IMG/VR virus record: IMGVR_UViG_3300023175_000005
Span: 186,001-250,000 of that record
Reading direction: 5' to 3' (one strand)
DNA: 64,000 bases
The notes beneath the pieces were generated by a model. The model was not told the origin of the DNA. It searched no databases and was given only the letters and a program-made list of their open reading frames with translations. The position numbers were made by a program, and so were the translations under genes. This document shows, in pieces, positions 36,375 to 50,889 of this stretch (the first letter of the stretch is position 1; each line of letters opens with the position of its first letter).

Positions 36375-37241
36375 CTAACATAGTATTTTATTCAATCTGT
36401 TTTGTTGTATATGTTTAATTTCATTTTCCGGCATTCTAGCAATGACATCCAAATAAAATTGCGGAACAAGTGATTTATTTTTAATAATGTTATATACTAA
36501 ATTTTTATTGTAGTCAATCTCTTTTTGATCAATTTCTTTAGGAAAATTTTCAATACTTTCTATAAAAAGATCAACCCTGTTGTCAACATCTTCGTCATAT
36601 CTATAATCTACTCCAGTGTATGGTTTGAATCCTAGAGATTGTAAAAATTTATTGAATCCTGGTGCAGCAAATGTAATGAAAGGTTTGCTACAAAGTAAAG
36701 GTCTAACGGTCTTTTCTGTAATAAAAATTCTCTCTACAGATGTTTCTAATACAACATCAAATCTTGATCTTAAATATTGCATAGGTAAACTATATTGCTT
36801 ATCGATATCTGTCCATCCTTTATGAAAAGTTAGAAATGCATTATTATGCAAATTTTTACTTTTTATTTTGTCTATAATTTCGATTCTATGTGGCCTTGCT
36901 ATATTATTCATGCAAGCAAAATTATATTTTATTGGTTGTTTAGAAATTCTATCTACCAATCGATAGGCTGTGTAATTAAACCAATATGTTGGCCAATAGT
37001 ATATATTCATATTTTTTATAGGATATAATTTTGTATAATCGTACCCAGGTGCAGATCCTAATACAATATATACTTCTATGTTATTATCATTAATTATTTG
37101 GCAACAGTTTTTATATTCTAACCAACATTGATCCTCATGTTGGGCAAATATTACAATATGCTTTGGCAACTTTTTATTGTTAAGTAGGTATACAATCCTA
37201 TCAATATCAAAGTCGTGCCAAACATCAAAAAACCATGTCAA
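36375..37241 (-). CDS. GT10/GT-B glycosyltransferase-like protein
   Basis: FDVVLETS...FITEKT; paralog of 13271-14182. Confidence 0.45.
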   Translation of the reverse strand: MTWFFDVWHDFDIDRIVYLLNNKKLPKHIVIFAQHEDQCWLEYKNCCQIINDNNIEVYIVLGSAPGYDYTKLYPIKNMNIYYWPTYWFNYTAYRLVDRISKQPIKYNFACMNNIARPHRIEIIDKIKSKNLHNNAFLTFHKGWTDIDKQYSLPMQYLRSRFDVVLETSVERIFITEKTVRPLLCSKPFITFAAPGFNKFLQSLGFKPYTGVDYRYDEDVDNRVDLFIESIENFPKEIDQKEIDYNKNLVYNIIKNKSLVPQFYLDVIARMPENEIKHIQQNRLNKILC

Positions 37242-38307
37242 TACAAGTACCTCTGAATTTATCTAAATGTTTTTGGTAACTCATGCCTTGTTCAAAGTGT
37301 TTTATATTACGTTCTCGAGTAACTGCCGGTAAGCTTCTTTTAAGATCTTTATACACATCGCATAAGTCTATATAAATTTGTTTATGATCATCAGGTGCAT
37401 GACACGGTGCAAATTCTTTAGGACTGTTCACAGGATAAACTTCCCATCTTTCAAAATTATTTGACATAATCCATTCACCTAGTGATTCCATATGTTTTAC
37501 GTTAATCCAACTTACAGTTGTACAGACATCACTTGTACCAATTTGTTGTGCTTTTGCAATGTTTTTTATAATTTTATCCCAATTGCTAGGATACCTAATA
37601 TATTCATTTATTTCTTTATAACCGTCAATGCTAAAATGCCACTCCACATCAAATTTTTCTAAAATTGAAAGTAGTTTAGTGGGTAAATTGTTTCCGTTTG
37701 TAGTTATACGTAAACTAGGTTTGCTATCATATACTAAAAGATATTCGCAAAACTTTTGAAGGTAATTGTTTACAGTTGGTTCTCCACCTGTGAAACGTAT
37801 TTCATCTCTATCGTGTAAAAATTCAGCAAGTTTTTGTAAATTGTTTTCGTCTTCATACCATACATCAAACGAATACTTGTGTCTTTGTATTAGTTTATGT
37901 TGTATACCTTGGCTATCTAGTTTTGTAAGTTCTGCATCTATAAGACTGCTGTTCACAGGACCGCACATTGAACACGAAAGATTACATTTGTTTCCAAATT
38001 TTATTTCAGCGTCTTTACGATTGTTTCTATACTTTCTTTCGCTTTGCAATCGTAAACTTTCAAAGCCGTAAGATTCTTCTTCTTTACAATCTCTACATCC
38101 TTCGGGAAATATTCCATTATCAAGATCTTTCTTAACACTTGCTAAAAAGTCACTGTCTTTGTATTTTTCAATATCTGAAACTTTTACAAGATCTTTTCTG
38201 TCGCGGTCGTCCCAATTACAGCAAGGGCGTAAATTACCCAAAGTATCCATGCTGATGTGATTATCTAGCCATTTACACTTCTTCGGAGAGTTCGAAGAGT
38301 TTGTCAA
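37225..38307 (-). CDS. Radical SAM/twitch protein (TTG start inferred)
   Basis: CKW...RPCC...CRDC; CNLSCSMC; TGGEP; TTNG; SIDG. Confidence 0.85.
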   Translation of the reverse strand: MTNSSNSPKKCKWLDNHISMDTLGNLRPCCNWDDRDRKDLVKVSDIEKYKDSDFLASVKKDLDNGIFPEGCRDCKEEESYGFESLRLQSERKYRNNRKDAEIKFGNKCNLSCSMCGPVNSSLIDAELTKLDSQGIQHKLIQRHKYSFDVWYEDENNLQKLAEFLHDRDEIRFTGGEPTVNNYLQKFCEYLLVYDSKPSLRITTNGNNLPTKLLSILEKFDVEWHFSIDGYKEINEYIRYPSNWDKIIKNIAKAQQIGTSDVCTTVSWINVKHMESLGEWIMSNNFERWEVYPVNSPKEFAPCHAPDDHKQIYIDLCDVYKDLKRSLPAVTRERNIKHFEQGMSYQKHLDKFRGTCIDMVF

Positions 38308-39394
38308 TTTCTCTGACTTTTCCACAGGATTTTCCGCACTGGACCCAGCATTGACTGATTGATTTTGATTGCCAACTGTCTGAATAAACTGCAAGTACGC
38401 CTCCGTCTATAATTTGATCAAGTCTATGATGATGTAAATTGTTAGCATCACCTAGTGCTTTTTGTAGTGTTTGCATTTCTCTTGCTTCAGGAACATATCT
38501 AGGACCTTGCATTTTATTTCCTATAAAGCAACAAGGATGAACTCTTCCCAATGCATCTATATATAGTTCAACCATTGGTTCTTCATGGTATGGATATGGC
38601 AAAGTTCTAAAACTATTACAGGCAATAACGCCTTCTTCTTTAACAGGTTCTGGCAAATCTGCTTCCCAACCTAATGGAGCAGGTGTATAATGGTCATGTC
38701 CGTAATCAGTAGCATGTTCTAACACATATTCTAAGTTATAGTCTTTGTCGTATGCAGGCATACCTGTTCCATCTACACCAAATGGATTTTTTAACACAAA
38801 ATTGATACCATTTTCTTCTGCAATTTTTCTACTGAGTTCAACTTGATGTTTGTTGTGTTTAAATTGTAAAAAGTCCCAATCAGTATGCGCACCTGTATAT
38901 GCATAGGCAATCATGTTATTCCATGCTTTATCCCAAATAACATTTCTTCTGTATATATGGTTAGTATCTTCTAAGCCGTCTATACTAAATGTAATTTTAC
39001 GCATTGGTTTTGGATCTAAACCATTTGTTGTTTCTATAAACAGTTCTCCTATTGCACGGAAATGATCCGGAGTACGCAAACCACCATTTGTGTTAATTTG
39101 TATAGTTGCTATACTGTTAGAGCATATATAATCTAATATATCATATATGTCATTACAGGCCAATGGATCTCCATGTGTTCCGCAAAATATCCAACTTTTA
39201 GATTTTTGTACAAGATCTAGTGGAAACCATCTTTTAAACAAATCAATTGTAATATCAGTCTGCACAACTTCCGGATCGACATTAGTGCTATTACGTAAGA
39301 ATCTTGGACAGCCTGGACACGCTGCGTTACAACGTGTACTTAATTCTACGTGGAAAGCATTTAAATCGTTATAATTCCATGCATTATACTTCAT
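38273..39394 (-). CDS. Radical SAM/SPASM protein
   Basis: CNAACPGC; CGTHGDP; TNG; SIDG; HPCC...CWVQC; TAAATAC-TAT-ATG start. Confidence 0.85.
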   Translation of the reverse strand: MKYNAWNYNDLNAFHVELSTRCNAACPGCPRFLRNSTNVDPEVVQTDITIDLFKRWFPLDLVQKSKSWIFCGTHGDPLACNDIYDILDYICSNSIATIQINTNGGLRTPDHFRAIGELFIETTNGLDPKPMRKITFSIDGLEDTNHIYRRNVIWDKAWNNMIAYAYTGAHTDWDFLQFKHNKHQVELSRKIAEENGINFVLKNPFGVDGTGMPAYDKDYNLEYVLEHATDYGHDHYTPAPLGWEADLPEPVKEEGVIACNSFRTLPYPYHEEPMVELYIDALGRVHPCCFIGNKMQGPRYVPEAREMQTLQKALGDANNLHHHRLDQIIDGGVLAVYSDSWQSKSISQCWVQCGKSCGKVREIDKLFELSEEV

Positions 39395-39855: not shown

Positions 39856-40367
39856 TCACCCACAACTTCGTTATAATAACCTTGGTCCCAATTCACGTAA
39901 TAGTTTTGTTTACGTAAAGACTTTCGTGCAAGTTCAAGTTTATCTTTTTGCTGCAAGAAACTTACAGCGTATTTACCGTTATTAAGAACTGTATTTTGTA
40001 CCTGTTCTTTTTCATTTGGATGATCTTCTAAAGCAATAAATCCTCTATTGTGTAGGAATTGGTCGTTTGCATGACCAACTGCACGTGATAGTTCTTCTGA
40101 TGAAATTAAAGTAGGGTCACAACCTAATATAACAACTTCTGTATTTTTAGGCCAATGATAAGAAAAATTTTCAAGTTCTGCTATAAAATAAGAACTCATA
40201 CTTATATTATAAATATCTTTTAATTCTACACACTTAATCTTGTCTTCTAGCATTGCTTGTTTAGCAAACGGACAAGGAGGAAGGTTATTAAATGTTTTAG
40301 AAGGTATGCTGAGAAAAGTTTCTATCCAGTTTTGTATATGTTGTTCAAACATAACATTACTTTGCAC
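39852..40367 (-). CDS. DUF1415-like protein
   Basis: WIETF...PCPFAK; EDHP; FLQ. Confidence 0.45.
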   Translation of the reverse strand: MQSNVMFEQHIQNWIETFLSIPSKTFNNLPPCPFAKQAMLEDKIKCVELKDIYNISMSSYFIAELENFSYHWPKNTEVVILGCDPTLISSEELSRAVGHANDQFLHNRGFIALEDHPNEKEQVQNTVLNNGKYAVSFLQQKDKLELARKSLRKQNYYVNWDQGYYNEVVGE

Positions 40368-40542
40368 CTTTAGTCATTGACTTTTTGCGGATAGTGGCAT
40401 AGTAAACATTTTCCCAATCTTTACCATACTGTTTTTTCATATTCTTTTTCATATCACCGTCGTCATACTTTTTCTTAAGTTTTGTTTCCTTAGACTTTTC
40501 AGCCCCGGTCATTTTACGTTCAGTGAATTCGTGAATACGCAT
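40357..40542 (-). CDS. Small basic probable internal head protein
   Basis: MRIHEFTE CTS-like N-terminus; Lys-rich. Confidence 0.5.
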   Translation of the reverse strand: MRIHEFTERKMTGAEKSKETKLKKKYDDGDMKKNMKKQYGKDWENVYYATIRKKSMTKGAK

Positions 40543-40544
40543 TA

Positions 40545-41441
40545 TTAATCACATTTACATGAGCCTGGTTCACCGCGTGGTACGCCTGCTACTTTACGAC
40601 AACCTTTCCAGCATTTATCATAAATTTTACTGTTGCCGTGACGCTTACCTTCTGGCAGATTTGCTAGTTCTTTTTTCTCTTGAGCAGTAAGCATTGTCTT
40701 GCCACATTCGTTACAAGTTTGTTCTTTCATTTTTTCAGCAAGCGTTGTTTTATAATCAGCTTTTGCTGCTTCGTCCATATTGCCTTTGAATGTTTTCTTT
40801 GACTCTCCCATCATATCATAATCTAGTGTATGATATACTGAGCCCATATAGTCTGCTGCTTTTGTGATTTTGCTTTGCATCCAACCTTCGATGCCCTCTG
40901 CCTCTGAAACACCTTTTAGCATTTCGTGTAGTTTAATTGCATACTTTGCAATTTTATAAAGTTCTGCACGAGCCATTTGTACTTCGTGATCACGTTCTGC
41001 AACACCTGCCATATCAGCCAAACCTTCTGTAACTGCATTGCAATTACAGTGTTTGCATGTTGGAGGACATGTGCAGTCTTCTGCTTTTACGTCTGAACCG
41101 CAGCATTTATCTGAACAATGTGTATCTTTTGCTTCAATCATGCCTTCGCTAGTACCACCTTTAGCAAGAGCAACTAATTCTTTAAAACGATCTACAGTAA
41201 ACTCACCTTGATCACGCATTGTTGTATATTCACTCATCGCATCTAGCAACTCTCTTGCGGTTGATACTTGCTGATTAGCAATTAGTGATCCCATATGATC
41301 TAATTGATTAAAATCAACATCATTCATAGGTGCGTTCTTGACGTTTTGAATACGTCTGCGAATCATTGGAAGCAGTGTCTTTGTCATTTGAGCGAACTGC
41401 ATCTGTGCTTTGTTTTTTGCTGCTTTATTCATTGTAGGCAT
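40545..41441 (-). CDS. Probable internal head polyprotein with Cys-rich modules
   Basis: Late promoter 41469-41474; repeated xxE/(A,G,S) junctions; HCSDKCC..CTCPPTCKHCNC. Confidence 0.5.
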   Translation of the reverse strand: MPTMNKAAKNKAQMQFAQMTKTLLPMIRRRIQNVKNAPMNDVDFNQLDHMGSLIANQQVSTARELLDAMSEYTTMRDQGEFTVDRFKELVALAKGGTSEGMIEAKDTHCSDKCCGSDVKAEDCTCPPTCKHCNCNAVTEGLADMAGVAERDHEVQMARAELYKIAKYAIKLHEMLKGVSEAEGIEGWMQSKITKAADYMGSVYHTLDYDMMGESKKTFKGNMDEAAKADYKTTLAEKMKEQTCNECGKTMLTAQEKKELANLPEGKRHGNSKIYDKCWKGCRKVAGVPRGEPGSCKCD

Positions 41442-41471
41442 CGGTGGCTCCGTTTTCTCTTGTTGTAGTAT

Positions 41472-41654
41472 TTATCGTTTCAGCAGTGATCCGCCAAATA
41501 ATGATACACCTTTCATATCCAATGCATTATCAGTTGGCTTTTGTTTTTTAGGTTTTCTTTTAGATTTTGCAACAGTTGGATTTACCACTGTTGATACACT
41601 TGATGTTCCCATTCCTGTTGCAACTTCATTTACTATAACATCTTTTATCTTCAT
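41472..41654 (-). CDS. Small basic probable internal head protein
   Basis: MKIKDVIVNE. Confidence 0.5.
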   Translation of the reverse strand: MKIKDVIVNEVATGMGTSSVSTVVNPTVAKSKRKPKKQKPTDNALDMKGVSLFGGSLLKR

Positions 41655-41656
41655 TG

Positions 41657-41926
41657 TCAAGTCCCTCCTACTAACTTTCCTCTTAAAGGATGTTTTGTTG
41701 TAGGACCTTTACCCGGCTTTGATTTCTTAGGCATTGGATCTTTGCCTTTAGCATGATCAGCATGTTTATATTCTTCATATGCCTTGCCTTTATGCTTTTC
41801 TTTCCGAGGTAGTACTTTCTTTTTATCTTTGTGAGCACCTGCTGCACCACTTTTGCGAATATCCTGCATAGTTTTACTGCTAGGATCTCTCTGTTTCACT
41901 GCTTCTAAAATATCTTGCATCTTCAT
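41657..41926 (-). CDS. Small basic probable internal head protein
   Basis: MKMQDILEA; KQ...GAGAHKDKK. Confidence 0.5.
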   Translation of the reverse strand: MKMQDILEAVKQRDPSSKTMQDIRKSGAAGAHKDKKKVLPRKEKHKGKAYEEYKHADHAKGKDPMPKKSKPGKGPTTKHPLRGKLVGGT

Positions 41927-42111
41927 TTGGCTCTCCTGAGGTCTGTAATGCCTGCGTTTTTACCGTATTGAGCATAAATGATGTTACGTGCTTCTCTGTT
42001 ATTTCTTGCGCTAACTTGGACAGGTATCCATTGTGTGTATGTACGCTGGCGCACTCGGACATTTGCTATCCAAACAGAAAATTGACTCTTTTTGACTTCT
42101 CTTATTAGCAT
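41923..42111 (-). CDS. Small basic protein, probable leaderless late gene
   Basis: MLIREV; TAAATAC-ATT-ATG. Confidence 0.55.
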   Translation of the reverse strand: MLIREVKKSQFSVWIANVRVRQRTYTQWIPVQVSARNNREARNIIYAQYGKNAGITDLRRAK

Positions 42112-42118
42112 AATGTAT

Positions 42119-42952
42119 TTATCTTAAACCTTTTAAGTTCTTCACAGTTCTTTCAAACTTGTGATCTTTGTGTTTAAAGCCGATGCCGCCTGCTTCAGAC
42201 CATTTGTTAATGTTAACACCATAATCGTCGATTAGAATATTTGCAGAACCGTCTGAGTTCGTAGCATACTGTGCTTTGTCGTGTGTTAAAAATATTCTTC
42301 TAGGTGGAAAAAATGACAAATTTTTCTTGATCCATTCCTTTTTATGTGGAATACTTTTAGGATCATCAGCAAGCGGACTGCTTAATATATTATAACTGCC
42401 TTTGACACGCTTGATTAACATTAACAAAGGCTTTGCATTTTTTGTAAGAGGTAAATTTAACCAAAAATCATCTACTGTTTTAATTTTATTAATTGCATTA
42501 GCAGGATCTTCGATATCAGTCCAGTGTTTTTTGTTCATTAATTTAGCCCAATCGCCAAAAAAGTCAGCAAGTACACCGTCCATGTCTACGTAAATTTCAG
42601 TATTAGGACCTATATTTTCTAGTTCTTCTACTAGTTCATTGTTATATGCAAGCCATGCGATTTCACTTCCGTGTCCTTTTGGCCATGAATGTTCTTCCGG
42701 TAGGCTATGCCCGCCCTCCATCAGTGCAAGTTCATATGCACTATAGGTTTTTTCTGCTAGTCCTAAATTAAAAAGTACGTTAGTAGATTTACCTTTTACT
42801 TTAGTTGATAGTGTAGGTGGACGTCCGTTTTTATCTACAGTATTACCAAATTTTGCTGCTTGCTTTGGTATTTCGTCTACGTCTACATCAGGAGTAGTGT
42901 TAACTCCTTTTACAATACGTCCATCTTCTTTTAAAAATTCAAATAGTTTCAT
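42119..42952 (-). CDS. HAD 5'(3')-deoxyribonucleotidase (NT5C-like) fused to a CTS-like leader
   Basis: MKLFEFLKE; YVDMDGVLADF; K..WI; LIDD. Confidence 0.75.
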   Translation of the reverse strand: MKLFEFLKEDGRIVKGVNTTPDVDVDEIPKQAAKFGNTVDKNGRPPTLSTKVKGKSTNVLFNLGLAEKTYSAYELALMEGGHSLPEEHSWPKGHGSEIAWLAYNNELVEELENIGPNTEIYVDMDGVLADFFGDWAKLMNKKHWTDIEDPANAINKIKTVDDFWLNLPLTKNAKPLLMLIKRVKGSYNILSSPLADDPKSIPHKKEWIKKNLSFFPPRRIFLTHDKAQYATNSDGSANILIDDYGVNINKWSEAGGIGFKHKDHKFERTVKNLKGLR

Positions 42953-43059
42953 TCACAATTACACTTCGTACATACATCGTTTACACAGTCTTTACAATCG
43001 GGTTGATAGCAATGGCATTTATGCCCACAACTTTTGCAAGTTCTTCTTTCGCCCTTCAT
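42949..43059 (-). CDS. Unannotated 36-aa Cys-rich peptide (9 Cys, 2 His)
   Basis: MKGERRTCKSCGHKCHCYQPDCKDCVNDVCTKCNCE; ATGA overlaps at both ends. Confidence 0.7.
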   Translation of the reverse strand: MKGERRTCKSCGHKCHCYQPDCKDCVNDVCTKCNCE

Positions 43060-43268
43060 TTCTTTCTCCCTCTAAATTGCACGGGACCTGTCATATAAGG
43101 TTTTGAAAACCATAGTTTAAACCAATCTTCGTCTCCTGGCTTAAGACCCATTTCGCGTTCTTTCTTTTTTAGAGCAGCCGCAGTTTTATCTGGACTTTCT
43201 ATTTTATATTCTGTATAGCCTTGGAATTCATTAATTCCTGCCAGCTTCTTTAGATCTTCTATGTTCAT
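43056..43268 (-). CDS. Small probable internal head protein
   Basis: MNIEDLKKLAGINE. Confidence 0.55.
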   Translation of the reverse strand: MNIEDLKKLAGINEFQGYTEYKIESPDKTAAALKKKEREMGLKPGDEDWFKLWFSKPYMTGPVQFRGRKK

Positions 43269-43461
43269 CCCAGTATTTGTTTCTTTCGTTTGTGCTTGTT
43301 CTGTTTTCTTCGTGTTGTTTATATTTGGCTATATAGTGTGCCCATTCTATGTCATCGATACTCATATCTTCGTGTTCTCTCCACGTTTTGCTATACCCAT
43401 CTGGGTATTCTTCTGCCCAGTCTATTTTTTCTTTTTGCCCGACTTCATGTTTGCGCACCAA
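43231..43461 (-). CDS. Hypothetical protein
   Basis: 76 aa, overlaps neighbours. Confidence 0.45.
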   Translation of the reverse strand: MVRKHEVGQKEKIDWAEEYPDGYSKTWREHEDMSIDDIEWAHYIAKYKQHEENRTSTNERNKYWDEHRRSKEAGRN

Positions 43462-45506
43462 TGATACATCCTCGCTTTTTCACCACTACTATTTTTAGCC
43501 CTCTTGCGTAGTGCTGTAACACTACCATTACAACTAGCACCTGAACGCTTTACACGCCCTGGTCTGCTTTTGCCTTTTACTTTACCATCAGCAAAGTTTT
43601 CATTCATTCCAAGTTGATCAACCATTATTTCTAACGCTGAATCTACATCATTTAAACCATTTTCTTCTTTTGTTTTCTCATACCAACTTCTTACAAAGTT
43701 TGATGCTGCGTGTCCATAAGTATCTGGCGCCATCATCATTTGATAAAGAACTTGATCAGGTGCTTCTCGTTGAGACCTAACAAATTTTCTAAGACTATCT
43801 AAGTCTGTACTTTCATTATATGCTATATTTGTTGCTGCTTTTGCTTTTGCACCGTGTGGATGTTTAGGATTTATACCCACAGGTTCGCCATTTATAAGTT
43901 GTGAAATATCTACACTCTTGCCTAGTCTATCTAGCAGTTGATGTAATTTGTCAGTGGGATCGTAATTACCGCTTTCATAACCACTTTTACCACGCACTTC
44001 GGTACGTTTACCTGTAGCAGTATCTACAATGTGTAGTATCATTAGATCGCCGTCACGTTCTAATGTTAGTTTGTAACCTTCAGTAATTTTTTTTTTGGGT
44101 TTTGTCTTTTTTGGCTTTTCGTCTGAACTATGACCAAAATACTTGTGAACTAATTTGTCTAGTTTTCTATGGAATTCATCTTCTTCATCCGGAGAAGCAT
44201 CTTCAGATATGTCAATTGATTCGTCGGCCATCTTTTTAACAAGTTCGTCACCTTTTTTCGTAAAGAATTTTTGTAGGGCAACACCTCCTAAGATCAATAT
44301 TACTGCCATCATAATACTAAACTTGTTTGCAACAAGGAATTTAACCATTTCAGCACCAAGTATACTTTCAACCCAGTCCCATCCTTTTTTAGCATAATAT
44401 GCCGCTGTGCCGCCTATTGCTATTTTGCCGCCATGCCGTCTAATTGCCCATTTGACTACAGGAACTGCGCCTCTCCTTGCAGCCCATCCTAAAACCCAAC
44501 CTGCTGCTTTTGCACCTGCCCATAATACTGCTGGTGCAATTTCATTAACTTGTTGTTCATTGACATTATCTGCCATTCTGATACTGTGTTTTATGCCAAT
44601 ATTGTTAAAAAGTTTACTTGCATTTTGCACACTTGTTAGTGCTCTTTTCATTCTATCTTGATATTTAGGATTGTTATCAAACTTTGAAATAAATTTCTTT
44701 GCTTCATCAGGTTTAACATATATAAGTTTGCCACTCCATGCAGCACCTTTCCTATAAAAACTTAAAAAATGTTCTTTACCGTCTGCGCGATCTGCAATCC
44801 AACTTAGTACTTTAATTTTATTAGGATCTTGGCTTTTTATACTTGTATTATCGTTACCTAAACCAAATAATTCTTTAACACTTTCTTCTGCTGGTGCTTC
44901 AGTATCTCCTAATGCTTGATTAAGTAGTTTTACAGCAACAGGAGCACCATTACCGTACATAAGTTTTGCGGCTTTTAATTTATCTTCGTCTGACATTTCA
45001 GGCCATGTTGCTCTAAGTTCACTAGCACTCTTAATTTGTATACCTGAAAAACCAAAATCTATAGTAGGACCATAGGCCATATAGCCCATTTCATCACTAG
45101 TTCTAAGATTTTTTCCTTTGTATGACCTTAAATAACCAGGCTCACCATTCTTCTTTGTTTGATCTGGCAACGGTTGTTCGCCTTTGTCTTTTAGACTTCG
45201 TACAAATACTATTGCTGCATCGTCTCCTAACATGTCTTTATAACTGTTTAAGTTAAAAGGTGACTTGACTTGTATAAAACGCTCTGCAGGAACTCCTGCC
45301 ATACTAGCAAGTTTCTTTTTTACATCGAAAGGAAATGGTCTAGTTTTAGTGTCTGCTGTTGCAGCAACATATACATTTTCACTGCCAAATGTTTTTGTTG
45401 CCCAATCATATAAACTTTTGTGACCAGGATGAAAAGGATGAAATCCTCCAGGCATAATTGCAACAATTCGTCTTGCCTGTGCTTCAAATAGGTCACGGAC
45501 GAACAT
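43422..45506 (-). CDS. Modular probable internal head polyprotein with N-terminal HIGH-type nucleotidyltransferase domain
   Basis: MFVRDLFEA start (TAATG); PGGFHPFHPGH and SASELR; several xNE/xTE junctions. Confidence 0.6.
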   Translation of the reverse strand: MFVRDLFEAQARRIVAIMPGGFHPFHPGHKSLYDWATKTFGSENVYVAATADTKTRPFPFDVKKKLASMAGVPAERFIQVKSPFNLNSYKDMLGDDAAIVFVRSLKDKGEQPLPDQTKKNGEPGYLRSYKGKNLRTSDEMGYMAYGPTIDFGFSGIQIKSASELRATWPEMSDEDKLKAAKLMYGNGAPVAVKLLNQALGDTEAPAEESVKELFGLGNDNTSIKSQDPNKIKVLSWIADRADGKEHFLSFYRKGAAWSGKLIYVKPDEAKKFISKFDNNPKYQDRMKRALTSVQNASKLFNNIGIKHSIRMADNVNEQQVNEIAPAVLWAGAKAAGWVLGWAARRGAVPVVKWAIRRHGGKIAIGGTAAYYAKKGWDWVESILGAEMVKFLVANKFSIMMAVILILGGVALQKFFTKKGDELVKKMADESIDISEDASPDEEDEFHRKLDKLVHKYFGHSSDEKPKKTKPKKKITEGYKLTLERDGDLMILHIVDTATGKRTEVRGKSGYESGNYDPTDKLHQLLDRLGKSVDISQLINGEPVGINPKHPHGAKAKAATNIAYNESTDLDSLRKFVRSQREAPDQVLYQMMMAPDTYGHAASNFVRSWYEKTKEENGLNDVDSALEIMVDQLGMNENFADGKVKGKSRPGRVKRSGASCNGSVTALRKRAKNSSGEKARMYHWCANMKSGKKKK

Positions 45507-45859
45507 TAGTACTCTCCGTTGCGGAAGTTTTCTATTTCGCCTCTTAGTATTTGATCGATTACCATCATCTTTTCTTCTCTTGTACACATCTCTTCGGGCA
45601 TTTTTTTGATTTTAAATTTATTAACATATTCTTTTATAGCACATTCGACAGTAGGAAGTAAAGACTTTTTATCGTATCTTTTGCCTTTTTTTACAACTTC
45701 TTGTACATCACACATTTTTGGATATAACTGGCGTCTATAAAATTCAGGATCATTCTTCATATACACCACTAAATCGTCAACAACGTTAAACGGAAGTTTA
45801 TCTCCCGTTTTTGTATCCATGTCTTGGCTAAGATCGTGAAACTCGTTGATTTTTACCAT
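45506..45859 (-). CDS. Hypothetical protein
   Basis: MVKINEFH; coupled at both ends. Confidence 0.6.
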   Translation of the reverse strand: MVKINEFHDLSQDMDTKTGDKLPFNVVDDLVVYMKNDPEFYRRQLYPKMCDVQEVVKKGKRYDKKSLLPTVECAIKEYVNKFKIKKMPEEMCTREEKMMVIDQILRGEIENFRNGEY

Positions 45860-46611
45860 TTGCGGCAACTCCAGTAACGTGCTTTTGTTCTTGGTCCTGG
45901 ATTATCACAGTTATGTCTAGCACGGAATGAACGTCTACGTGCTGGGTTAGACTTTTTGATCTTCATGTTTGGATCACCAAAGTTAACTTTCTTAATATTT
46001 TTAGTCTTTGGATCTCTTACATATACTTTGAACTTTTTAACATCGCCGCGCATAGGTTTGCCAAGTTTAACTTTGCGTCCTTGATATTCAGCTTCGTCCA
46101 TTGATTTTCTATCACGTCTTAATTCTAAATATTTTGTTCCACTAGTTGCTACCATACCCATTGCTTTTGCATCGTTTTGTGCTTGCATTTTATTTGTTAT
46201 TGGATAGCTTTTTTTAACTTCTAGTGTTCCTGGATCATAGACAATATACATATTTCTATATTTTTCAAACTCTGATCTTTCTTCTAAACCTTCATCTTCA
46301 TCTTCGTTGAACCACATGACACCGTAGTTTTCAAAAAACTCGTCGCCGTCATATGTTTCTTCAATATCTGAAATTTCTTCGTTAGCAGATATTTCAATAT
46401 CAAAGTCGTCATAACCTTGTTCAAACATATAATTTGCTAGGTGCTCTGCATATCCATCTGCTTCTTCTTCTGATAATTCCCTAGATAGAGGAATTTCAAA
46501 AACTGTTGCACCCTGTTCTGATTCAAAAATGTCGTTGCCTGGAAAAATTGACTCATCTAACTTTTCAGCAATATCAGTTTTTTCCATGACTACTCGGATA
46601 AAATGTTCCAT
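45853..46611 (-). CDS. Probable late/head protein, acidic N-half and basic C-terminal module
   Basis: Late promoter 46640-46645; MDEAEYQGRKV...RYWSCRKW. Confidence 0.55.
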   Translation of the reverse strand: MEHFIRVVMEKTDIAEKLDESIFPGNDIFESEQGATVFEIPLSRELSEEEADGYAEHLANYMFEQGYDDFDIEISANEEISDIEETYDGDEFFENYGVMWFNEDEDEGLEERSEFEKYRNMYIVYDPGTLEVKKSYPITNKMQAQNDAKAMGMVATSGTKYLELRRDRKSMDEAEYQGRKVKLGKPMRGDVKKFKVYVRDPKTKNIKKVNFGDPNMKIKKSNPARRRSFRARHNCDNPGPRTKARYWSCRKW

Positions 46612-46638
46612 GATCGATCCTTTGTAAATTTACTAATA

Positions 46639-47337
46639 CTATTTATCTAGATCGTGTTTGTAAATTAGTTTATCGATCCTTGAAATATTACCACCTGCAA
46701 GTAGTTCAAACAATGTAAGTGCTTTGTCGTTCTTAATATAAACGTATTGCCCTTTTATCCAGTTTTTGTTTTTTATTTTTTGTAACAGTTTAGTGCCGCA
46801 TTTGCATAAATTAGGATTTTTTACAATCCAATTAGCCATTTCAGGATTAACATTCTTGCCACCAAATGTAACTTTATAATCAAACTCTGTTTCTTTGTTA
46901 ACAATAATTACATTTTTATTATTTTGCAAATATTCTATCATATCAGGACTCGGCTTCCAAACTTTAATGTAGTCTGCTGATAAAGTATTGGCTAATTTGT
47001 CTATCAAACTCTCGTTGTTTGAATAAATGTTTAAGAAACTTTGCTCTATTCTAACAGTATAGTCTGTTTCATGCATTAGATTGGTAATGATTCTTTCGAC
47101 ATCTAATATCTCATTAGTATCAATAGAAATATGTGAGTGACCAAATCTTGCGTTTACTTGAAATGTTTTACTTCCAGGAAAAATTCTTGCTTTAAATGAA
47201 TTAAGTTCTCGTCTTGCGTACTGAAAGTTTTTCCCGTGCTGTATTTCAGTACGCAATATATGTGCTATATAAAGTCTTGTTTCTAATTTATATAGATATT
47301 TGTTATAATGTAGTTTTGTAGTCTCAGCTTGTTGCAA
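46639..47337 (-). CDS. Hypothetical protein
   Basis: 232 aa, coupled to clpA. Confidence 0.6.
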   Translation of the reverse strand: MQQAETTKLHYNKYLYKLETRLYIAHILRTEIQHGKNFQYARRELNSFKARIFPGSKTFQVNARFGHSHISIDTNEILDVERIITNLMHETDYTVRIEQSFLNIYSNNESLIDKLANTLSADYIKVWKPSPDMIEYLQNNKNVIIVNKETEFDYKVTFGGKNVNPEMANWIVKNPNLCKCGTKLLQKIKNKNWIKGQYVYIKNDKALTLFELLAGGNISRIDKLIYKHDLDK

Positions 47338-49573
47338 TTACAGTACTCTCAACATTTAAGACGATGTCTTTGCCTTTTGCGTTGATTGATAGTTTACCAC
47401 CGTCTTTCAAATCACCAAACAATAGCATTCTTGACAAAGGACGTTTAATATCTTTGTCAATAACACGCTGTAATGGTCTTGCACCCATTTTACGATCAAA
47501 GCCTTTGTCTACTAACAAATCTAATGCTTCGTCTGTAACAGAAACTTCTACGTTTTTATCCGCAACTTGATCTTTAAGTTCTTTTAAGAACTTGCCAACA
47601 ATTTTTAACATCACAGGCTTACCAAGTTTAGCAAACGTAATAACGCCATCTAGCCTATTTCTAAACTCTGGTGCAAAGAATTTTTTCAATTCGCCATCTT
47701 CGTAGTCAGAACCGTCTGATTCTTCACCAAATCCGATAGCATTTTTCTCTGCTTCTCTTGCACCAAGATTTGTTGTTAGGATTAGGATACTGTTACGTGC
47801 ATCTGCTTCCTTACCGTTGCTGCCAGTGATCATACCGTTGTCCATAAGTTGCAATAAAACATTACTTACATCTGGGTGTGCTTTTTCAATTTCATCTAGC
47901 AACAACACACAGTTGGGATTTTCTTGCAGTTTGATAATCAACTGTCCTGCATCGTCTTCAAATCCTACATAACCTGGAGGTGCACCGATAAACTTTGCAA
48001 CACTATGCTTCTCTTGATATTCACTCATATCAAATCGTACAAGTTGTACACCTAAATGATGTGCAAGTTGTTTTGCTGTTTCTGTTTTACCTGTACCTGT
48101 CGGACCCATAAACACAAATGATCCAATCGGTTTATCTTCTGGTTTAAGTCCTGCTTGCGAAACAAGTATTTTATCAACAATACCTTCGATTGCTTCGTCT
48201 TGACCGTAAACACTACCTTTCATATTAGTTTCTAAATTAGCAAGATTTTCTGTCTCACGTTCTGCAACTTGCTCTTTTGGTATTTTAACCATTTTTGCAA
48301 GTTCAAATTGAATACTTTCTTCTGTGACAATTTTATTTTCTGTCTGATTATTGACCTTGAACCTACTACATGCAACATCAATAACATCAATTGCTTTGTC
48401 AGGTAGTTTTTTATCTGCTTGATATTTGATTGTAAGTTTTACTGCTGCTTCAATTGCTTCATCTGTAATTTCTACAGTATGAAATTCTTCATAATATTTC
48501 TTAATACCATGTAAAATATCTTTTGTAATTTCTGCACTCGGCTCGTCAACAGTTACACGCTGGAATCTTCTCATAAGCGCACGATCTGATTCGAAGTACT
48601 TGCGGTACTCTTCCCAAGTAGTTGAAGCAACAACTTTGATATTACCTTTAGACAATGCAGGTTTTAACATATTTGCTAAATCATTTGCACTATTACTTCC
48701 ACCTGCGCCAGCGCCACTAATCATGTGTGCTTCGTCAATAAACATAATAGTTTTGCCTTTTTTCTGTAGTGCAGATAACACAAGTTTAAAGCGTTCTTCA
48801 AAGTCGCCGCGGTATTTTGAACCTGCAAGCATACTGCCGATATCAAGTGCATAAACATTGTATTCTTTTAAAAACTCTGGAACATCGTTGTTTACAATTT
48901 TCCATGCTAAACCTTCAGCAATAGCAGTTTTACCCACACCTGGATCGCCGACCATAAGCACATTTGATTTTGTGCGGCGTCCTAGTGCAAGTGCTAGTGA
49001 TTCTATTTCGTCTTCCCGTCCGATAACAGGATCTATACGACCTTTTTTAACATCGGCATTGAGATCGTCAGTAAATGCTTTTAATGCTTTGTTAGCAATA
49101 CCAGCATTTTCCATGTCTTCGTCTGCTACTATATCTAATTCAAGTTCTGCACTCATATATTGGATAAACTTATCTTTCTGAATGCCTGCTTGTTGACATG
49201 CAAAGAACGCATAACTTCTTTTTTCGCTTAATGTACTAATAAAAACATCAGTAATTTCGATTTGATTGCGTCCTTGAAATAATACTTGTGCAAAAGCTCG
49301 ATTTAAAACCCGCTCAACAGTGCCTGTCTTAACAGGTTTATATTTTTTTGCTTCTGTTTTAATTTCGTTTAATTTTGTTTTGAGATAATTTTCTACATTC
49401 TTTTTCAATAGGTCTACATCTGTATCAAACCCTTTTAATGCTGTAGAAAATTGTTCTTCACACAGCATTGCAAACAGAAGATGTTCAAGAGTAACATATT
49501 CATGCTGTAATTTCTTTGCGTCTTTAACTGCCTTATCAAATACTACTTGTAATGCTTGGCTAGGTTCTACCAT
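47324..49573 (-). CDS. clpA: ATP-dependent Clp protease ATP-binding subunit
   Basis: N-domain EHLL; GDPGVGKT; FIDEAH; GPTGTGKT; LLLDEIEKAH; IGF ClpP-docking loop; GARPL. Confidence 0.93.
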   Translation of the reverse strand: MVEPSQALQVVFDKAVKDAKKLQHEYVTLEHLLFAMLCEEQFSTALKGFDTDVDLLKKNVENYLKTKLNEIKTEAKKYKPVKTGTVERVLNRAFAQVLFQGRNQIEITDVFISTLSEKRSYAFFACQQAGIQKDKFIQYMSAELELDIVADEDMENAGIANKALKAFTDDLNADVKKGRIDPVIGREDEIESLALALGRRTKSNVLMVGDPGVGKTAIAEGLAWKIVNNDVPEFLKEYNVYALDIGSMLAGSKYRGDFEERFKLVLSALQKKGKTIMFIDEAHMISGAGAGGSNSANDLANMLKPALSKGNIKVVASTTWEEYRKYFESDRALMRRFQRVTVDEPSAEITKDILHGIKKYYEEFHTVEITDEAIEAAVKLTIKYQADKKLPDKAIDVIDVACSRFKVNNQTENKIVTEESIQFELAKMVKIPKEQVAERETENLANLETNMKGSVYGQDEAIEGIVDKILVSQAGLKPEDKPIGSFVFMGPTGTGKTETAKQLAHHLGVQLVRFDMSEYQEKHSVAKFIGAPPGYVGFEDDAGQLIIKLQENPNCVLLLDEIEKAHPDVSNVLLQLMDNGMITGSNGKEADARNSILILTTNLGAREAEKNAIGFGEESDGSDYEDGELKKFFAPEFRNRLDGVITFAKLGKPVMLKIVGKFLKELKDQVADKNVEVSVTDEALDLLVDKGFDRKMGARPLQRVIDKDIKRPLSRMLLFGDLKDGGKLSINAKGKDIVLNVESTVIATS

Positions 49574-50084
49574 TTTTGTTCCTTTTTGCTTGCTTTTTTA
49601 AACCCATGTTAAGTTTTAGTCTGCTAACTCTATTAATGAATTGTATTCCTTGTAAGTGATCATATTCGTGTAAAAATATTCTACTGTCAATATCATTAAA
49701 TTTTGTCTCTACATGTATAACATCTTTATAGTCATTTGTCAACGTATCAAATTCAACAACACAACTAATTGGACGTCTTACTTTAAGTGTCAACCCCGGA
49801 TGGCTTAAACACCCTTCAATTCCTTCTTCTAATTCTTTACTAATACCTTTAATGTGCGGATTTATTACAACGATTGTATCGCCGTATTTTTTATTTAACA
49901 AACATTTCATAACAAATATCTGCCCATTTATTCCCACTTGATTTGCTGATAATCCTAACCCTCCTTCCTTTTGCATTAATTCAATCATTTCAAATGCAAG
50001 AGGTCTTGGATTGTCTGTAGCCAAATCAAACTTTGGAACAGGATTTTCTAGTCTTGTATCAGGCGCTACGATTAATTGCATCAT
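49560..50084 (-). CDS. def: Peptide deformylase
   Basis: [21 protein letters not shown]. Confidence 0.93.
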
Positions 50085-50889
50085 TTATTAATTTTACCTT
50101 TTCTAGCATATTAGGATCTTTTATTTTTGGTGTAATACCTTTCAACTTTACATATAAATTTCCTGTACGTCCTGTATTAAGTTCTGGCAAACCTTTTCCA
50201 GATATACTTAATATAGTACCTGGGTTTGTTCCTGCAGGGATATTCAATCTAACCATGCCTCCTTCTAGAGTTGGAATGTTTTTAGTTGTACCTGCTATAA
50301 ATTCCAATAAATTGACCTTTTCTTCAATATGTAAGTGTGCATTATCCCTTCTAAACCTAGGATGTTTAACAATGGCTATTTGCATAATCAAGTCACCTCT
50401 AGGTAAACTATGTGCAGAGTGATCTCCTAATCCTCTGTATCTCATTAATTGACCATCCATTACACCAGGAGCAATTCTAATACTTGCACTTGTTTCTACA
50501 CCATTCAACATATTATAAGTTGCAAGAAAATCTTTACCTCGTAAAACATCTTCTAGTGTGAGACTTACCCGCAACCTAATATCTTTGTTTCTGACTGCAC
50601 GATGTTGTTGTGCAAAACCTTGTCCAAACATACTGCCAAAAATATCATTAAAATTACCGAAGTTATCAGTAAACGCATTACCTTGAAAATTATTATTAGT
50701 TGCAGGATTGTCATACAACGATCTTTTTTCAGGATCTTTTAACGTATCATATGCTTCGTTAATTTGAGCGAACTTTTTGCCATCACCACCCTTGTCAGGA
50801 TGGTGTTGCATTGCAAGTTTTCTATATGCTTTCTTTAATTCGTCTGACGTGGCGTCTTTGTTTACACCCAGTACGCTGTAATAGTCCAT
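50059..50889 (-). CDS. DnaJ-class II/CbpA-like chaperone (no Zn finger)
   Basis: J-domain with HPD, G/F-rich linker, DnaJ C-terminal domains. Confidence 0.9.

What the first reader, a model, noticed from the sequence alone, without database searches (positions are those of the whole stretch)
40357..46611. Cluster of probable capsid-packaged internal proteins and polyproteins with CTS-like N-termini and repeated Glu cleavage junctions
Seen: N-termini MRIHEFTE, MKIKDVIVNE, MKMQDILEA, MLIREV, MKLFEFLKE, MNIEDLKKLAGINE, MFVRDLFEA, MVKINEF; three late TAAATA promoters (41469-41474, 42116-42121, 46640-46645); long ORFs built from unrelated modules joined at VNE/ITE/MDE/LEE-type sites. Established: T4 internal proteins use a capsid-targeting sequence (MKTYQEFIAE) and gp21 cuts after Glu. 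Inference: polyproteins processed in the head into many small effectors that are ejected on infection, a possible store of anti-defence proteins.
Basis: partly seen in the sequence, partly recalled or inferred. Interest (0 to 1): 0.75.

Follow-up and report, generated by a model that had tools for sequence, protein, structure and literature searches.

The report
Capsid-cargo gene cluster with shared leader
An uncultured salt-marsh jumbo phage with a T4-type head carries a fast-evolving cluster of otherwise unrelated late genes that share a short N-terminal tag and are built from shuffled modules joined at Glu sites, which most likely marks proteins loaded into the capsid and cut by the head protease, though no experiment shows this yet.

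Summary
The window belongs to a 256.6-kb uncultured RaK2-like jumbo myovirus that encodes a T4-type capsid protein and a gp21-family prohead protease.

- **Shared leader.** Eight of about twelve minus-strand genes at 40357-46611 begin with M-[KR]-[IL]-x-[DE]-[LIFV]-x-E. In 79 related metagenomic loci, 37% of genes in this slot carry it, against 0.6% of genes upstream.
- **Link to head proteins.** A matrix trained on the relatives picks a head-module gene in a cultured relative. With one inserted residue allowed, it ranks T4 gp24, Alt and IPI in the top 7 of 1992 ORFs.
- **Shuffled modules.** Modules occur alone behind a leader or inside long ORFs, and their borders carry [ILVM]-x-E, the T4 gp21 cleavage motif. 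All seven such sites of the 694-aa ORF lie at module borders.
- **Late promoters.** Three genome-typical ATAAATA motifs precede cluster genes.

The best reading is a hypervariable store of prohead-targeted, protease-processed cargo. Packaging, cleavage, ejection and any anti-defence role are untested. Two of the best-conserved genes lack the leader. I rate it a new variant of the T4 internal-protein system.

The parts
46640..46646 (-). late-promoter-like ATAAATA motif, 29 nt upstream of the 252-aa gene
   Evidence: G000 232640; genome-wide positional enrichment
45853..46611 (-). 252-aa gene with no cleavable leader. It has an acidic N-domain, a 65-aa insert, then [LIMV]-D-E followed by a nearly invariant basic C-terminal module (residues 174-252, phrog_7595).
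   Evidence: 29 homologues; N-terminal strand inside a fold with pLDDT about 85; C-module pLDDT below 50
45506..45859 (-). 117-aa gene. Its leader MVKINEF has T4-like spacing (compare T4 gp24 MAKINEL). Conserved in about 50 relatives.
   Evidence: rank 8 with one insertion allowed
43422..45506 (-). 694-aa multi-module ORF (ATG at 45506) with leader MFVRDLFE. Module residues: A 9-212 nucleotidyltransferase with HxGH; B 213-317; C 323-435 hydrophobic/TM; D 436-476; E 477-565; F 566-636; G 637-694 basic Cys module.
   Evidence: The only seven [ILVFM]xE sites (Glu 8, 212, 317, 322, 435, 476, 636) all fall in homology-defined border zones (P=2e-5).
43231..43365 (-). 44-aa small ORF (MSIDDIEW...), conserved in 7 relatives; overlaps the start of the next gene
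43056..43268 (-). 70-aa gene with a longer leader ending I-N-E at residue 14; conserved in 33 relatives
42949..43059 (-). 36-aa Cys-rich ORF (9 Cys); coding status uncertain, no homologue in the related loci
42119..42952 (-). 277-aa gene: leader MKLFEFLKE (1-9), module 10-67, variable linker 68-110, NT5C 5'-nucleotidase 111-277 with an invariant D-M-D-G motif
   Evidence: residues 1-112 low pLDDT, 113-271 pLDDT 82-95
42116..42122 (-). late-promoter-like ATAAATA motif, 5 nt upstream of the 62-aa gene
   Evidence: G000 228116
41923..42111 (-). 62-aa very basic gene (pI 11.5) with start MLIRE; only an I-R-E site at residue 5
41657..41926 (-). 89-aa basic gene with leader MKMQDILE; its two halves occur separately inside other proteins of relatives
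41472..41654 (-). 60-aa basic gene with leader MKIKDVIVNE; the same module is C-terminal in 182- and 198-aa proteins of relatives
41469..41475 (-). late-promoter-like ATAAATA motif, 28 nt upstream of the 298-aa gene
   Evidence: G000 227469
40545..41441 (-). 298-aa three-module ORF without leader: residues 1-103, then M-I-E; Cys module 104-139, then V-T-E; module 140-298 (GLADMA type, more than 2000 metagenomic homologues)
40357..40542 (-). 61-aa basic gene with leader MRIHEFTE, the top-scoring leader in the genome

Best explanation
The run 40357-46646 is a hyperplastic, late-transcribed locus of capsid cargo.

**Proposed mechanism.**
- Most genes start with an 8-10-residue amphipathic propeptide, M-[KR]-[IL]-x-[DE]-[LIFV]-x-E. 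This would act like the T4 capsid-targeting sequence: it brings the protein into the prohead core and is then cut off after the Glu by the phage's gp21-family protease.
- Longer ORFs are strings of independently evolving modules separated by lysine-rich linkers that end in [ILVM]-x-E. The same protease would release several small, mostly basic products and a few enzymes.
- The products would stay with the DNA and enter the host at infection.

**Shown.** The leader, its locus specificity and protein-level conservation, its likeness to N-termini of known T4 packaged proteins, the protease gene, the module shuffling with Glu-site borders, and the late-promoter motifs.

**Inferred.** Targeting, cleavage, packaging and ejection. 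What the products do in the host is unknown.
For: 1. **T4-type head.** The genome has a gp23 capsid gene (341 bits), a gp21-family protease (PF03420, 90.6 bits against a 27-bit cut-off), a portal and a scaffold-like gene.
2. **Locus-specific leader.** 177/484 genes against 6/1027 in 79 relatives, with 136 distinct 14-mers. It is encoded by many different codons, so selection acts on the peptide.
3. **Link to head proteins.** The relatives-trained matrix ranks the small gene between portal and protease of Vibrio phage 2.275.O first of 4039 ORFs. The own-genome counterpart starts MILRELYY.
4. **T4 test.** With one insertion allowed, the matrix ranks T4 gp24 1st, Alt 6th, IPI 7th, and IPIII and IPII 31st and 32nd of 1992 ORFs (P about 1e-9 to 3e-7).
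5. **Likely protease specificity.** The capsid protein has a conserved L-x-E followed by GLNG near residue 18 in this phage and the Vibrio phage. T4 gp21 cuts after L/I-X-E (PMC9026906).
6. **Same modules in two settings.** Modules occur stand-alone behind a leader or internally behind K-rich [ILV]-x-E. [ILVFM]xE is 3-4 fold enriched at internal homology-block starts. All 7 sites of the 694-aa ORF lie at borders.
7. **Late promoters.** Three ATAAATA motifs.
8. **Composition.** Most small products are basic, pI 9.4-11.5, as T4 internal proteins are (PMC9026906).
9. **A virion protein shares a module.** Cyanophage S-SM2 protein SSM2_109 shares one module and belongs to gene cluster T4-GC119, which was detected in S-SM1 virions.
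Against: - There are no virion or cleavage data, and no cultured close relative.
- The complex prediction of protease with a leader protein gave no answer.
- The locus lies between chaperone genes and the DNA polymerase, not in the head module.
- The 252-aa and 298-aa genes lack the leader. The 252-aa N-terminus is predicted to be a strand inside a fold.
- [ILVFM]xE is short and common (2.2% of positions) and is not depleted inside cluster proteins.
- The T4 match needs a one-residue insertion that I introduced knowing the T4 sequence. It also ranks uvsY, rI.-1 and an internal tk Met highly.
- One module is hydrophobic/TM-like, which is unusual for capsid cargo.
- NT5C and the nucleotidyltransferase could be ordinary cytoplasmic enzymes.
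Confidence: 0.6

Rival explanations
1. The proteins are packaged through the leader, but they serve mainly as prohead-core or DNA-condensing filler (structural or charge-neutralising internal proteins) rather than as host-directed effectors.
For: Most small products and modules are strongly basic. The best-conserved modules (G of the 694-aa ORF and the C-module of the 252-aa gene) are basic and predicted to be disordered. No PADLOC or known anti-defence match. T4 IPII and IPIII have no known host target (PMC9026906).
Against: The extreme turnover and shuffling of modules between close relatives is typical of conflict genes, not of structural filler. Enzyme modules with intact catalytic motifs also carry the leader.
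Confidence: 0.2
2. The long ORFs are uncleaved multidomain 'polyvalent' proteins. The [ILV]-x-E motifs are only linker features, and the leader alone may be removed.
For: Polyvalent phage proteins with 2-15 domains are known and predicted to be packaged (PMC5512222). There is no general depletion of [ILVFM]xE inside modules. No cleavage data exist.
Against: All seven motif sites of the 694-aa ORF coincide with module borders. The Glu is kept at the same position whether the module is N-terminal behind a leader or internal. None of the hallmark polyvalent domains was found.
Confidence: 0.12
3. The leader is a recognition tag for another shared process, for example handling by the adjacent phage ClpA-like unfoldase, DnaJ and peptide deformylase block, and has nothing to do with the capsid.
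For: DnaJ, deformylase, the ClpA-like gene and this cluster are syntenic in all relatives, including TARA contigs.
Against: The Vibrio phage has the ClpA-like gene without the cluster, and there the leader sits on a head-module gene. No ClpP gene is found in the 256 kb held. The leader resembles T4 packaged-protein N-termini.
Confidence: 0.06
4. The shared start is a by-product of translation-initiation optimisation or of a DNA recombination cassette at gene borders, with no function as a peptide.
For: Lys at position 2 and A-rich early codons are common in AT-rich phages. T4-type phages do use mobile regulatory cassettes for shuffling (PMC2839356, listed).
Against: Each leader position uses many synonymous and conservative codons. 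The motif is nearly absent from about 1000 neighbouring genes of the same genomes. The upstream DNA shows only an ordinary purine-rich ribosome site.
Confidence: 0.03

Closest known systems
T4 internal proteins IPI/IPII/IPIII and Alt with the capsid-targeting sequence, processed by gp21 (Mullaney & Black 1996; Repoila et al. 1994; reviews PMC9026906, PMC3012670)
   Same: Unrelated proteins share only a roughly 10-residue N-terminal propeptide that ends in a hydrophobic-x-Glu site. A gp21-family protease is present. The genes lie outside the head module and have late expression signals. The products are basic. The locus varies between relatives.
   Different: The leader is one residue shorter in most genes and has its own consensus. 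There are about 10 genes per genome instead of 3-4. Many are multi-module precursors with internal junction sites. The same modules are recombined freely between relatives. The host phage is a RaK2-like jumbo phage, not a Tevenvirinae member. Nothing has been shown experimentally.
Polyvalent proteins of phages and conjugative elements (Iyer, Burroughs, Anand, de Souza, Aravind 2017, PMC5512222)
   Same: Many unrelated small domains are strung in one phage polypeptide, predicted to be delivered with the DNA and sometimes proteolytically processed. Solo versions of the same domains exist.
   Different: None of the hallmark domains (MuF, portal fusion, MPTase peptidase, ART and others) was found by Pfam. 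Processing here would be by the prohead protease at short Glu sites rather than by an embedded peptidase. The locus is not next to virion genes.
Ejection / inner-body proteins of phiKZ-like giant phages (SPN3US, phiKZ), cut by their prohead protease after Glu (PMC10052503, PMC5694885)
   Same: A giant phage with many head-internal proteins trimmed after Glu. Some are cut into several fragments.
   Different: Those phages are reported to use a small residue at P3 (my recollection of the S/A/G-X-E motif; not checked here). They have no short common N-terminal tag of this kind and belong to a different phage lineage.
Cyanomyovirus gene cluster T4-GC119 (for example S-SM2 SSM2_109), a size-variable virion protein (Sullivan et al. 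2010, PMC3037559, Table S8)
   Same: It shares a module with the 298-aa gene (45% identity over 64 aa) and shows the same mosaic of small modules, many preceded by x-x-E. The cluster was detected in S-SM1 virions.
   Different: It is a single gene between gp16 and gp17 without the N-terminal leader. The member with the shared module (S-SM2) is not the one analysed by proteomics (S-SM1).

Membership tests
T4-type CTS-bearing internal (capsid-packaged) proteins | A short N-terminal propeptide shared by otherwise unrelated proteins | tested here: met
   There is no paralogy among cluster proteins beyond the start. The leader is present in 8 of about 12 genes and in 37% of slot genes in 79 relatives.
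T4-type CTS-bearing internal (capsid-packaged) proteins | The propeptide ends in the protease motif (L/I)-X-E | tested here: met
   Glu with [ILVF] at P3 is found at residues 8, 10, 8, 9, 8, 14, 6 and 5 in the eight leader genes. In the relatives, position 8 is Glu in 53 of 136 distinct leaders and position 9 in 29.
T4-type CTS-bearing internal (capsid-packaged) proteins | The genome encodes a gp21-family prohead protease and a scaffold core | tested here: met
   PF03420 at 90.6 bits (cut-off 27) at G000 87684-88307. A scaffold-like 362-aa gene and an acidic 322-aa core-like gene lie adjacent.
T4-type CTS-bearing internal (capsid-packaged) proteins | The leader sequence is like the T4 CTS | tested here: inconclusive
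   The ungapped matrix does not find T4 targets. With one insertion allowed, gp24, Alt and IPI rank 1, 6 and 7, and IPIII and IPII rank 31 and 32 of 1992. False positives include uvsY, rI.-1 and an internal tk Met.
T4-type CTS-bearing internal (capsid-packaged) proteins | Late transcription | tested here: inconclusive
   Three ATAAATA motifs of the genome's late-type consensus are present. Metatranscriptome contigs cover most of the locus with 0 mismatches, but DNA carry-over was not excluded and the contigs have no direction.
T4-type CTS-bearing internal (capsid-packaged) proteins | Physical presence in the virion, removal of the propeptide, ejection into the host | not testable with these tools
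   No cultured close relative. RaK2 virion proteomics is uninformative for this locus. The complex prediction gave no answer.
Polyvalent proteins (Iyer et al. 2017) | Several unrelated domains in one phage polypeptide, with solo versions elsewhere | tested here: met
   The 694-aa ORF has 7 modules, the 298-aa ORF has 3 and the 277-aa ORF has 2-3. Each also occurs solo or in other orders in relatives.
Polyvalent proteins (Iyer et al. 2017) | Hallmark domains (MuF or portal fusion, MPTase or other embedded peptidase, ART and others) and linkage to virion or transfer genes | tested here: not met
   Pfam, PHROG and NCBIfam find only NT5C and a weak nucleotidyltransferase. The neighbours are DnaJ, deformylase, ClpA-like, radical SAM and DNA polymerase genes.
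NT5C 5'(3')-deoxyribonucleotidase (PF06941) | Domain match above the curated cut-off and a HAD-type Asp-x-Asp motif | tested here: met
   34.8 bits against 24.8; phrog_2643 at 4e-22. D123-M-D125-G is invariant in 14 sequences. The domain folds with pLDDT 82-95.
Cytidylyl/adenylyl-transferase superfamily (PF01467, TIGR00125) | Domain match above the cut-off and an HxGH motif | tested here: inconclusive
   19.6 bits against 21 (Pfam) and 24.4 against 27.7 (TIGR00125). The best PDB sequence hits are PPAT at E=0.013. F-H-P-G-H is present at residues 23-29.

The most novel reading that the evidence does not exclude
An abundant clade of marine and salt-marsh jumbo phages uses a plug-and-play packaging code. 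Any module placed behind an 8-residue leader, or between lysine-rich [ILV]-x-E linkers, becomes capsid cargo. This would let the phages shuffle well over a hundred module families (enzymes, Cys-rich and basic peptides, a membrane-active piece) into ever-new sets of injected proteins. That would be a combinatorial, protease-defined effector arsenal not described for any phage.
Probability: 0.35. Interest if true: 0.85.

Novelty: new variant of a known kind. Interest (0 to 1): 0.7.

Why it matters
If the leader and junction code is real, injected proteins of an abundant, uncultured phage clade could be read from sequence alone. This clade recurs in many salt-marsh and ocean metagenomes: one module family alone has more than 2000 metagenomic homologues.

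It would extend the T4 capsid-targeting idea from three or four proteins in T-even phages to a large shuffled repertoire in jumbo phages. It would also give a list of candidate early-acting host-takeover or counter-defence modules, and a natural short tag plus linker for loading foreign proteins into large capsids.

The predictions are directly testable: peptides should begin after named Glu residues in viral-fraction proteomes from the same salt marsh.

Tried and rejected
**Searches and predictions that gave nothing**
- DNA search against cultured phages found no match.
- tblastn of the 694-aa and 298-aa proteins gave only remote partial hits.
- Pfam, PHROG, NCBIfam and PADLOC gave no function except NT5C and a weak nucleotidyltransferase.
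- The complex prediction of prohead protease with the 61-aa leader protein scored 0.00. The tool says this counts neither way.
- The AlphaFold model of the 252-aa protein gave no significant PDB fold match; the best E-value was 0.34, to generic ferredoxin-like folds.
- The sigma-70 promoter and terminator scan found nothing above chance.
- RaK2 and CBB virion proteomics papers say nothing on this locus or on a leader.

**Analyses that failed or came out negative**
- An alignment of module fragments to the 694-aa ORF was misplaced by MAFFT (A2), so I did not use it for a structure.
- Projecting the leader Glu onto internal contexts, using only BLAST matches that start after the Glu, gave no signal: 3 of 54 had Glu at P1. 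The junction signal depends on matches that begin 0-4 residues before the Glu.
- I looked for depletion of [ILVFM]xE inside cluster proteins. The motif is in fact mildly enriched, 1.33 times against 1.13 times in control genes.

**Ideas rejected**
- TATAAATA as the late promoter: only 8 copies exist. The working consensus is ATAAATA.
- The Vibrio phage 2.275.O locus downstream of its ClpA-like gene holds tail-fibre genes, not this cluster.
- A DNA-level cassette as the source of the leader is rejected on codon diversity.


Full report
**What the sequence is.** The window is bases 186001-250000 of a 256,558-base IMG/VR virus contig estimated to be 72% complete. The genome encodes a T4-type major capsid protein (PF07068, 341 bits). 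It also encodes a gp21-family prohead protease (PF03420, 90.6 bits), a portal, a scaffold-like protein and an acidic core-like protein. Its capsid gene is closest to RaK2-like jumbo myoviruses: Vibrio phage 2.275.O, Sinorhizobium phage Phosso, Salmonella phage 7t3 and Yersinia phage fHe-Yen9-04. No cultured phage matches the finding's DNA. The same DNA occurs in many salt-marsh metagenomes, and close relatives occur in TARA ocean contigs.

**Check of the observation.**
- All genes in 40357-46611 are on the minus strand. The eight quoted N-termini are at the stated starts.
- A simple regex for the shared start hits 12 of 283 called genes in the genome, 7 of them in this run of 11 (P=9e-9).
- The proteins show no paralogy apart from the start.
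- I used the upstream ClpA-like gene as an anchor and fetched 80 related loci with 70-100% identity in ClpA. Seventy-nine of them could be analysed.
- In those, the motif is carried by 6 of 1027 genes at or upstream of the ClpA-like gene, against 177 of 484 genes at positions +4 to +13 downstream.
- There are 136 distinct leader 14-mers. The consensus is M-[KR]-[IL]-x-[ED]-[LIFV]-x-E-[EA].
- Each position is spelled by many codons and the upstream DNA shows only a normal ribosome site. Selection therefore acts on the peptide.
- A matrix trained on relatives only (identical contig L003 excluded) places 8 cluster genes in the top 10 of 2783 ATG-ORFs of this genome. With one insertion allowed it places 9 in the top 11.

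**Promoters.** TATAAATA is rare (8 copies) and TAAATA is uninformative (217 copies). ATAAATA, mostly (G)ATAAATA(C), occurs 39 times, and 28 copies lie within about 100 nt upstream of a same-strand start. These include starts of large structural genes. One further copy lies 5 nt before a small head gene that my gene caller had missed. No sigma-70-like promoters or terminators stand out.

**Link between the leader and the head.**
- The third-best leader in the genome lies outside the window. It is a 172-aa gene at G000 96425-96943, behind two ATAAATA motifs and near the portal, tape-measure-like and baseplate-hub genes.
- The small gene between portal and protease (phrog_13986) starts MILRELYY here.
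- Its counterpart in Vibrio phage 2.275.O, NVP2275O_441, starts MKLVELFEA and is the top hit of 4039 ORFs in that genome. That phage has no cluster after its ClpA-like gene.
- The capsid protein of both phages has L-x-E followed by GLNG near residue 18, a likely maturation site.
- T4 gp21 cuts after L/I-X-E. The T4 internal proteins are targeted by 10-19-residue propeptides, with targeting residues at positions 4 and 7 and processing residues at 8 and 10 (PMC9026906). T-even internal proteins are described as diverse proteins that share only that sequence (PMC3012670).
- As a direct test I scored all 1992 ATG-ORFs of T4 with the matrix. Ungapped, it finds nothing. With one inserted residue allowed, gp24 ranks 1st, Alt 6th, IPI 7th, Alt.-1 9th, and IPIII and IPII 31st and 32nd.
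- False positives in that test are uvsY, rI.-1 and an internal Met of tk.
- I introduced the insertion knowing the T4 sequence, so I count this as support with a caveat. One cluster gene, the 117-aa MVKINEF, has the T4 spacing itself.

**Modules and junctions.** BLAST among 637 distinct proteins of the related loci shows that pieces of the long ORFs occur alone, in other orders and in other partners.

The 694-aa ORF has seven blocks:
- a nucleotidyltransferase with F-H-P-G-H (weak Pfam and TIGRFAM matches, PPAT-like);
- two blocks of unknown function;
- a hydrophobic block with one clear TM-like stretch;
- two more blocks of unknown function;
- a very conserved basic Cys block that ends many different proteins and also exists as a 67-69-aa gene behind a leader.

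Its block starting GYKL follows K-K-K-I-T-E here and follows a leader ending I-V-E in L013. The block of the 298-aa ORF starting GLADMA is preceded by [VILF]-x-E in nearly all of 31 contexts, whether internal or at a gene start. The same holds across 120 metagenomic homologues, where stand-alone forms start with an 8-residue leader such as M-R-E-K-E-I-S-E.

Over 2230 distinct internal homology-block starts, [ILVFM]xE peaks 3-4 fold at offsets 0 to +4. The 694-aa ORF has only seven such sites, and all lie in border zones defined by homology alone (P=2e-5).

In the 277-aa protein the alignment shows a leader, a conserved 58-residue module ending L-A-E, a hypervariable stretch, and then NT5C with an invariant Asp-x-Asp motif. 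In relatives, other modules are inserted into that stretch. AlphaFold gives low confidence for residues 1-112 and high confidence for 113-271.

Two of my tests did not support the idea:
- Projection from matches that start after the Glu gave no signal.
- There is no depletion of the motif inside cluster proteins.

**Genes without the leader.** The 252-aa gene is the most conserved member. Its N-terminus is predicted to be a strand inside a small fold. Its C-terminal 79 residues, behind an invariant D-E (preceded by L, I, M or V), are almost invariant in 29 relatives but are modelled with low confidence. No fold match was found. The 298-aa gene starts with a module that has no leader.

**Other evidence.**
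- The module shared with the 298-aa gene also occurs in cyanophage S-SM2 protein SSM2_109, a 708-aa mosaic with DUF192 and DUF6321. Its gene cluster T4-GC119 was detected in purified S-SM1 virions with 13 peptide counts (PMC3037559, Table S8).
- Four salt-marsh metatranscriptome runs hold zero-mismatch contigs over most of the locus. DNA carry-over cannot be excluded and the contigs have no direction.
- In those runs, contigs of relatives diverge from this sequence at 43601 and 43821. These positions lie at the borders of the last two modules of the 694-aa ORF.
- The complex prediction gave no answer.

**Interpretation.** The best-supported explanation is a T4-like capsid-targeting and processing system that has expanded into a hypervariable locus of single-module and multi-module precursors. 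I put this at about 0.6. Whether the products are effectors or mainly DNA-associated filler is open. Nothing links them to known defence or counter-defence families.

Rival readings:
- uncleaved polyvalent proteins (PMC5512222);
- a tag for the adjacent ClpA, DnaJ and deformylase block;
- a translation or DNA-cassette artefact.

These are less likely for the reasons given under each.

**Novelty.** The principle is known from T-even phages, and the multi-domain idea from polyvalent proteins. I found no description of three things in the searched literature: this leader, its use on about ten genes per genome in RaK2-like jumbo phages, and protease-site-delimited module shuffling. I rate it a new variant of a known kind.

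Noticed in passing
window 47324-50889 (minus strand): A DnaJ (276 aa), peptide deformylase (174 aa) and ClpA/ClpB-like AAA+ (749 aa) block lies directly upstream of the cluster. The order is conserved in all relatives, including TARA contigs. No ClpP gene is found in the 256 kb held.
   Followed up: partly
window 37225-39394 (minus strand); ATAAATA at window 39399: Two adjacent radical-SAM genes lie downstream of the cluster. The second is preceded, 5 nt upstream, by the same late-type promoter motif. Their substrate is unknown.
   Followed up: no
G000 96425-96943 (outside the window; L105:12425-12943, minus strand): A 172-aa gene starting MKVFEIISE has the third-best leader in the genome. It sits behind two overlapping ATAAATA motifs, near the portal, tape-measure-like and baseplate-hub genes, and has no family match.
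   Followed up: partly
G000 90159-90410 (L105:6159-6410, minus strand) and Vibrio phage 2.275.O 313256-313498: The small conserved gene between portal and prohead protease (phrog_13986) carries the leader. The Vibrio phage copy is the best leader match of 4039 ORFs in that genome. It may be the ancestral bearer of the tag.
   Followed up: partly
T4 NC_000866 18966-19130 (gene 61.1): The hypothetical 54-aa T4 protein gp61.1 starts MKTFKEFIKE, very like the IPI and IPIII targeting sequences, and ranks 3rd of 1992 ORFs. It could be an unrecognised packaged protein or a remnant of one.
   Followed up: no
window 42949-43059 (minus strand): A 36-aa ORF with 9 cysteines is wedged between the 70-aa and 277-aa genes and overlaps both. 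It has no homologue in the 79 related loci, and its coding status is unclear.
   Followed up: no
L104:4701-6827 (Synechococcus phage S-SM2, SSM2_109): This cyanophage gene between gp16 and gp17 is a 708-aa mosaic (DUF192, DUF6321 and a module shared with the 298-aa gene). Many modules are preceded by x-x-E. Its gene cluster varies from 276 to 2985 nt among cyanophages and was found in S-SM1 virions.
   Followed up: partly
window 43601 and 43821: In four salt-marsh metatranscriptome assemblies, contigs of related strains match this sequence up to these points and then run on unlike it. Both points lie at predicted module borders of the 694-aa ORF. Depth peaks over the two most conserved basic modules (43500-43699 and 45900-46099).
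   Followed up: partly
window 45856-46092 (C-terminal module of the 252-aa gene): A 79-residue basic module with over 50 invariant columns in 29 relatives (motifs KFKVYV, RRSFRARHNC, ARYWSC). It is modelled with pLDDT below 50 and has only a weak DUF5754 hit. Such strong conservation without a predicted fold suggests a nucleic-acid or partner-dependent structure.
   Followed up: partly
L003 (IMGVR_UViG_3300023108_001314, 164,766 bases): A second IMG/VR contig carries a 22-kb stretch with an identical ClpA-like gene and the same cluster gene set as the window. It is probably the same phage assembled from another sample, so it is not independent evidence.
   Followed up: no
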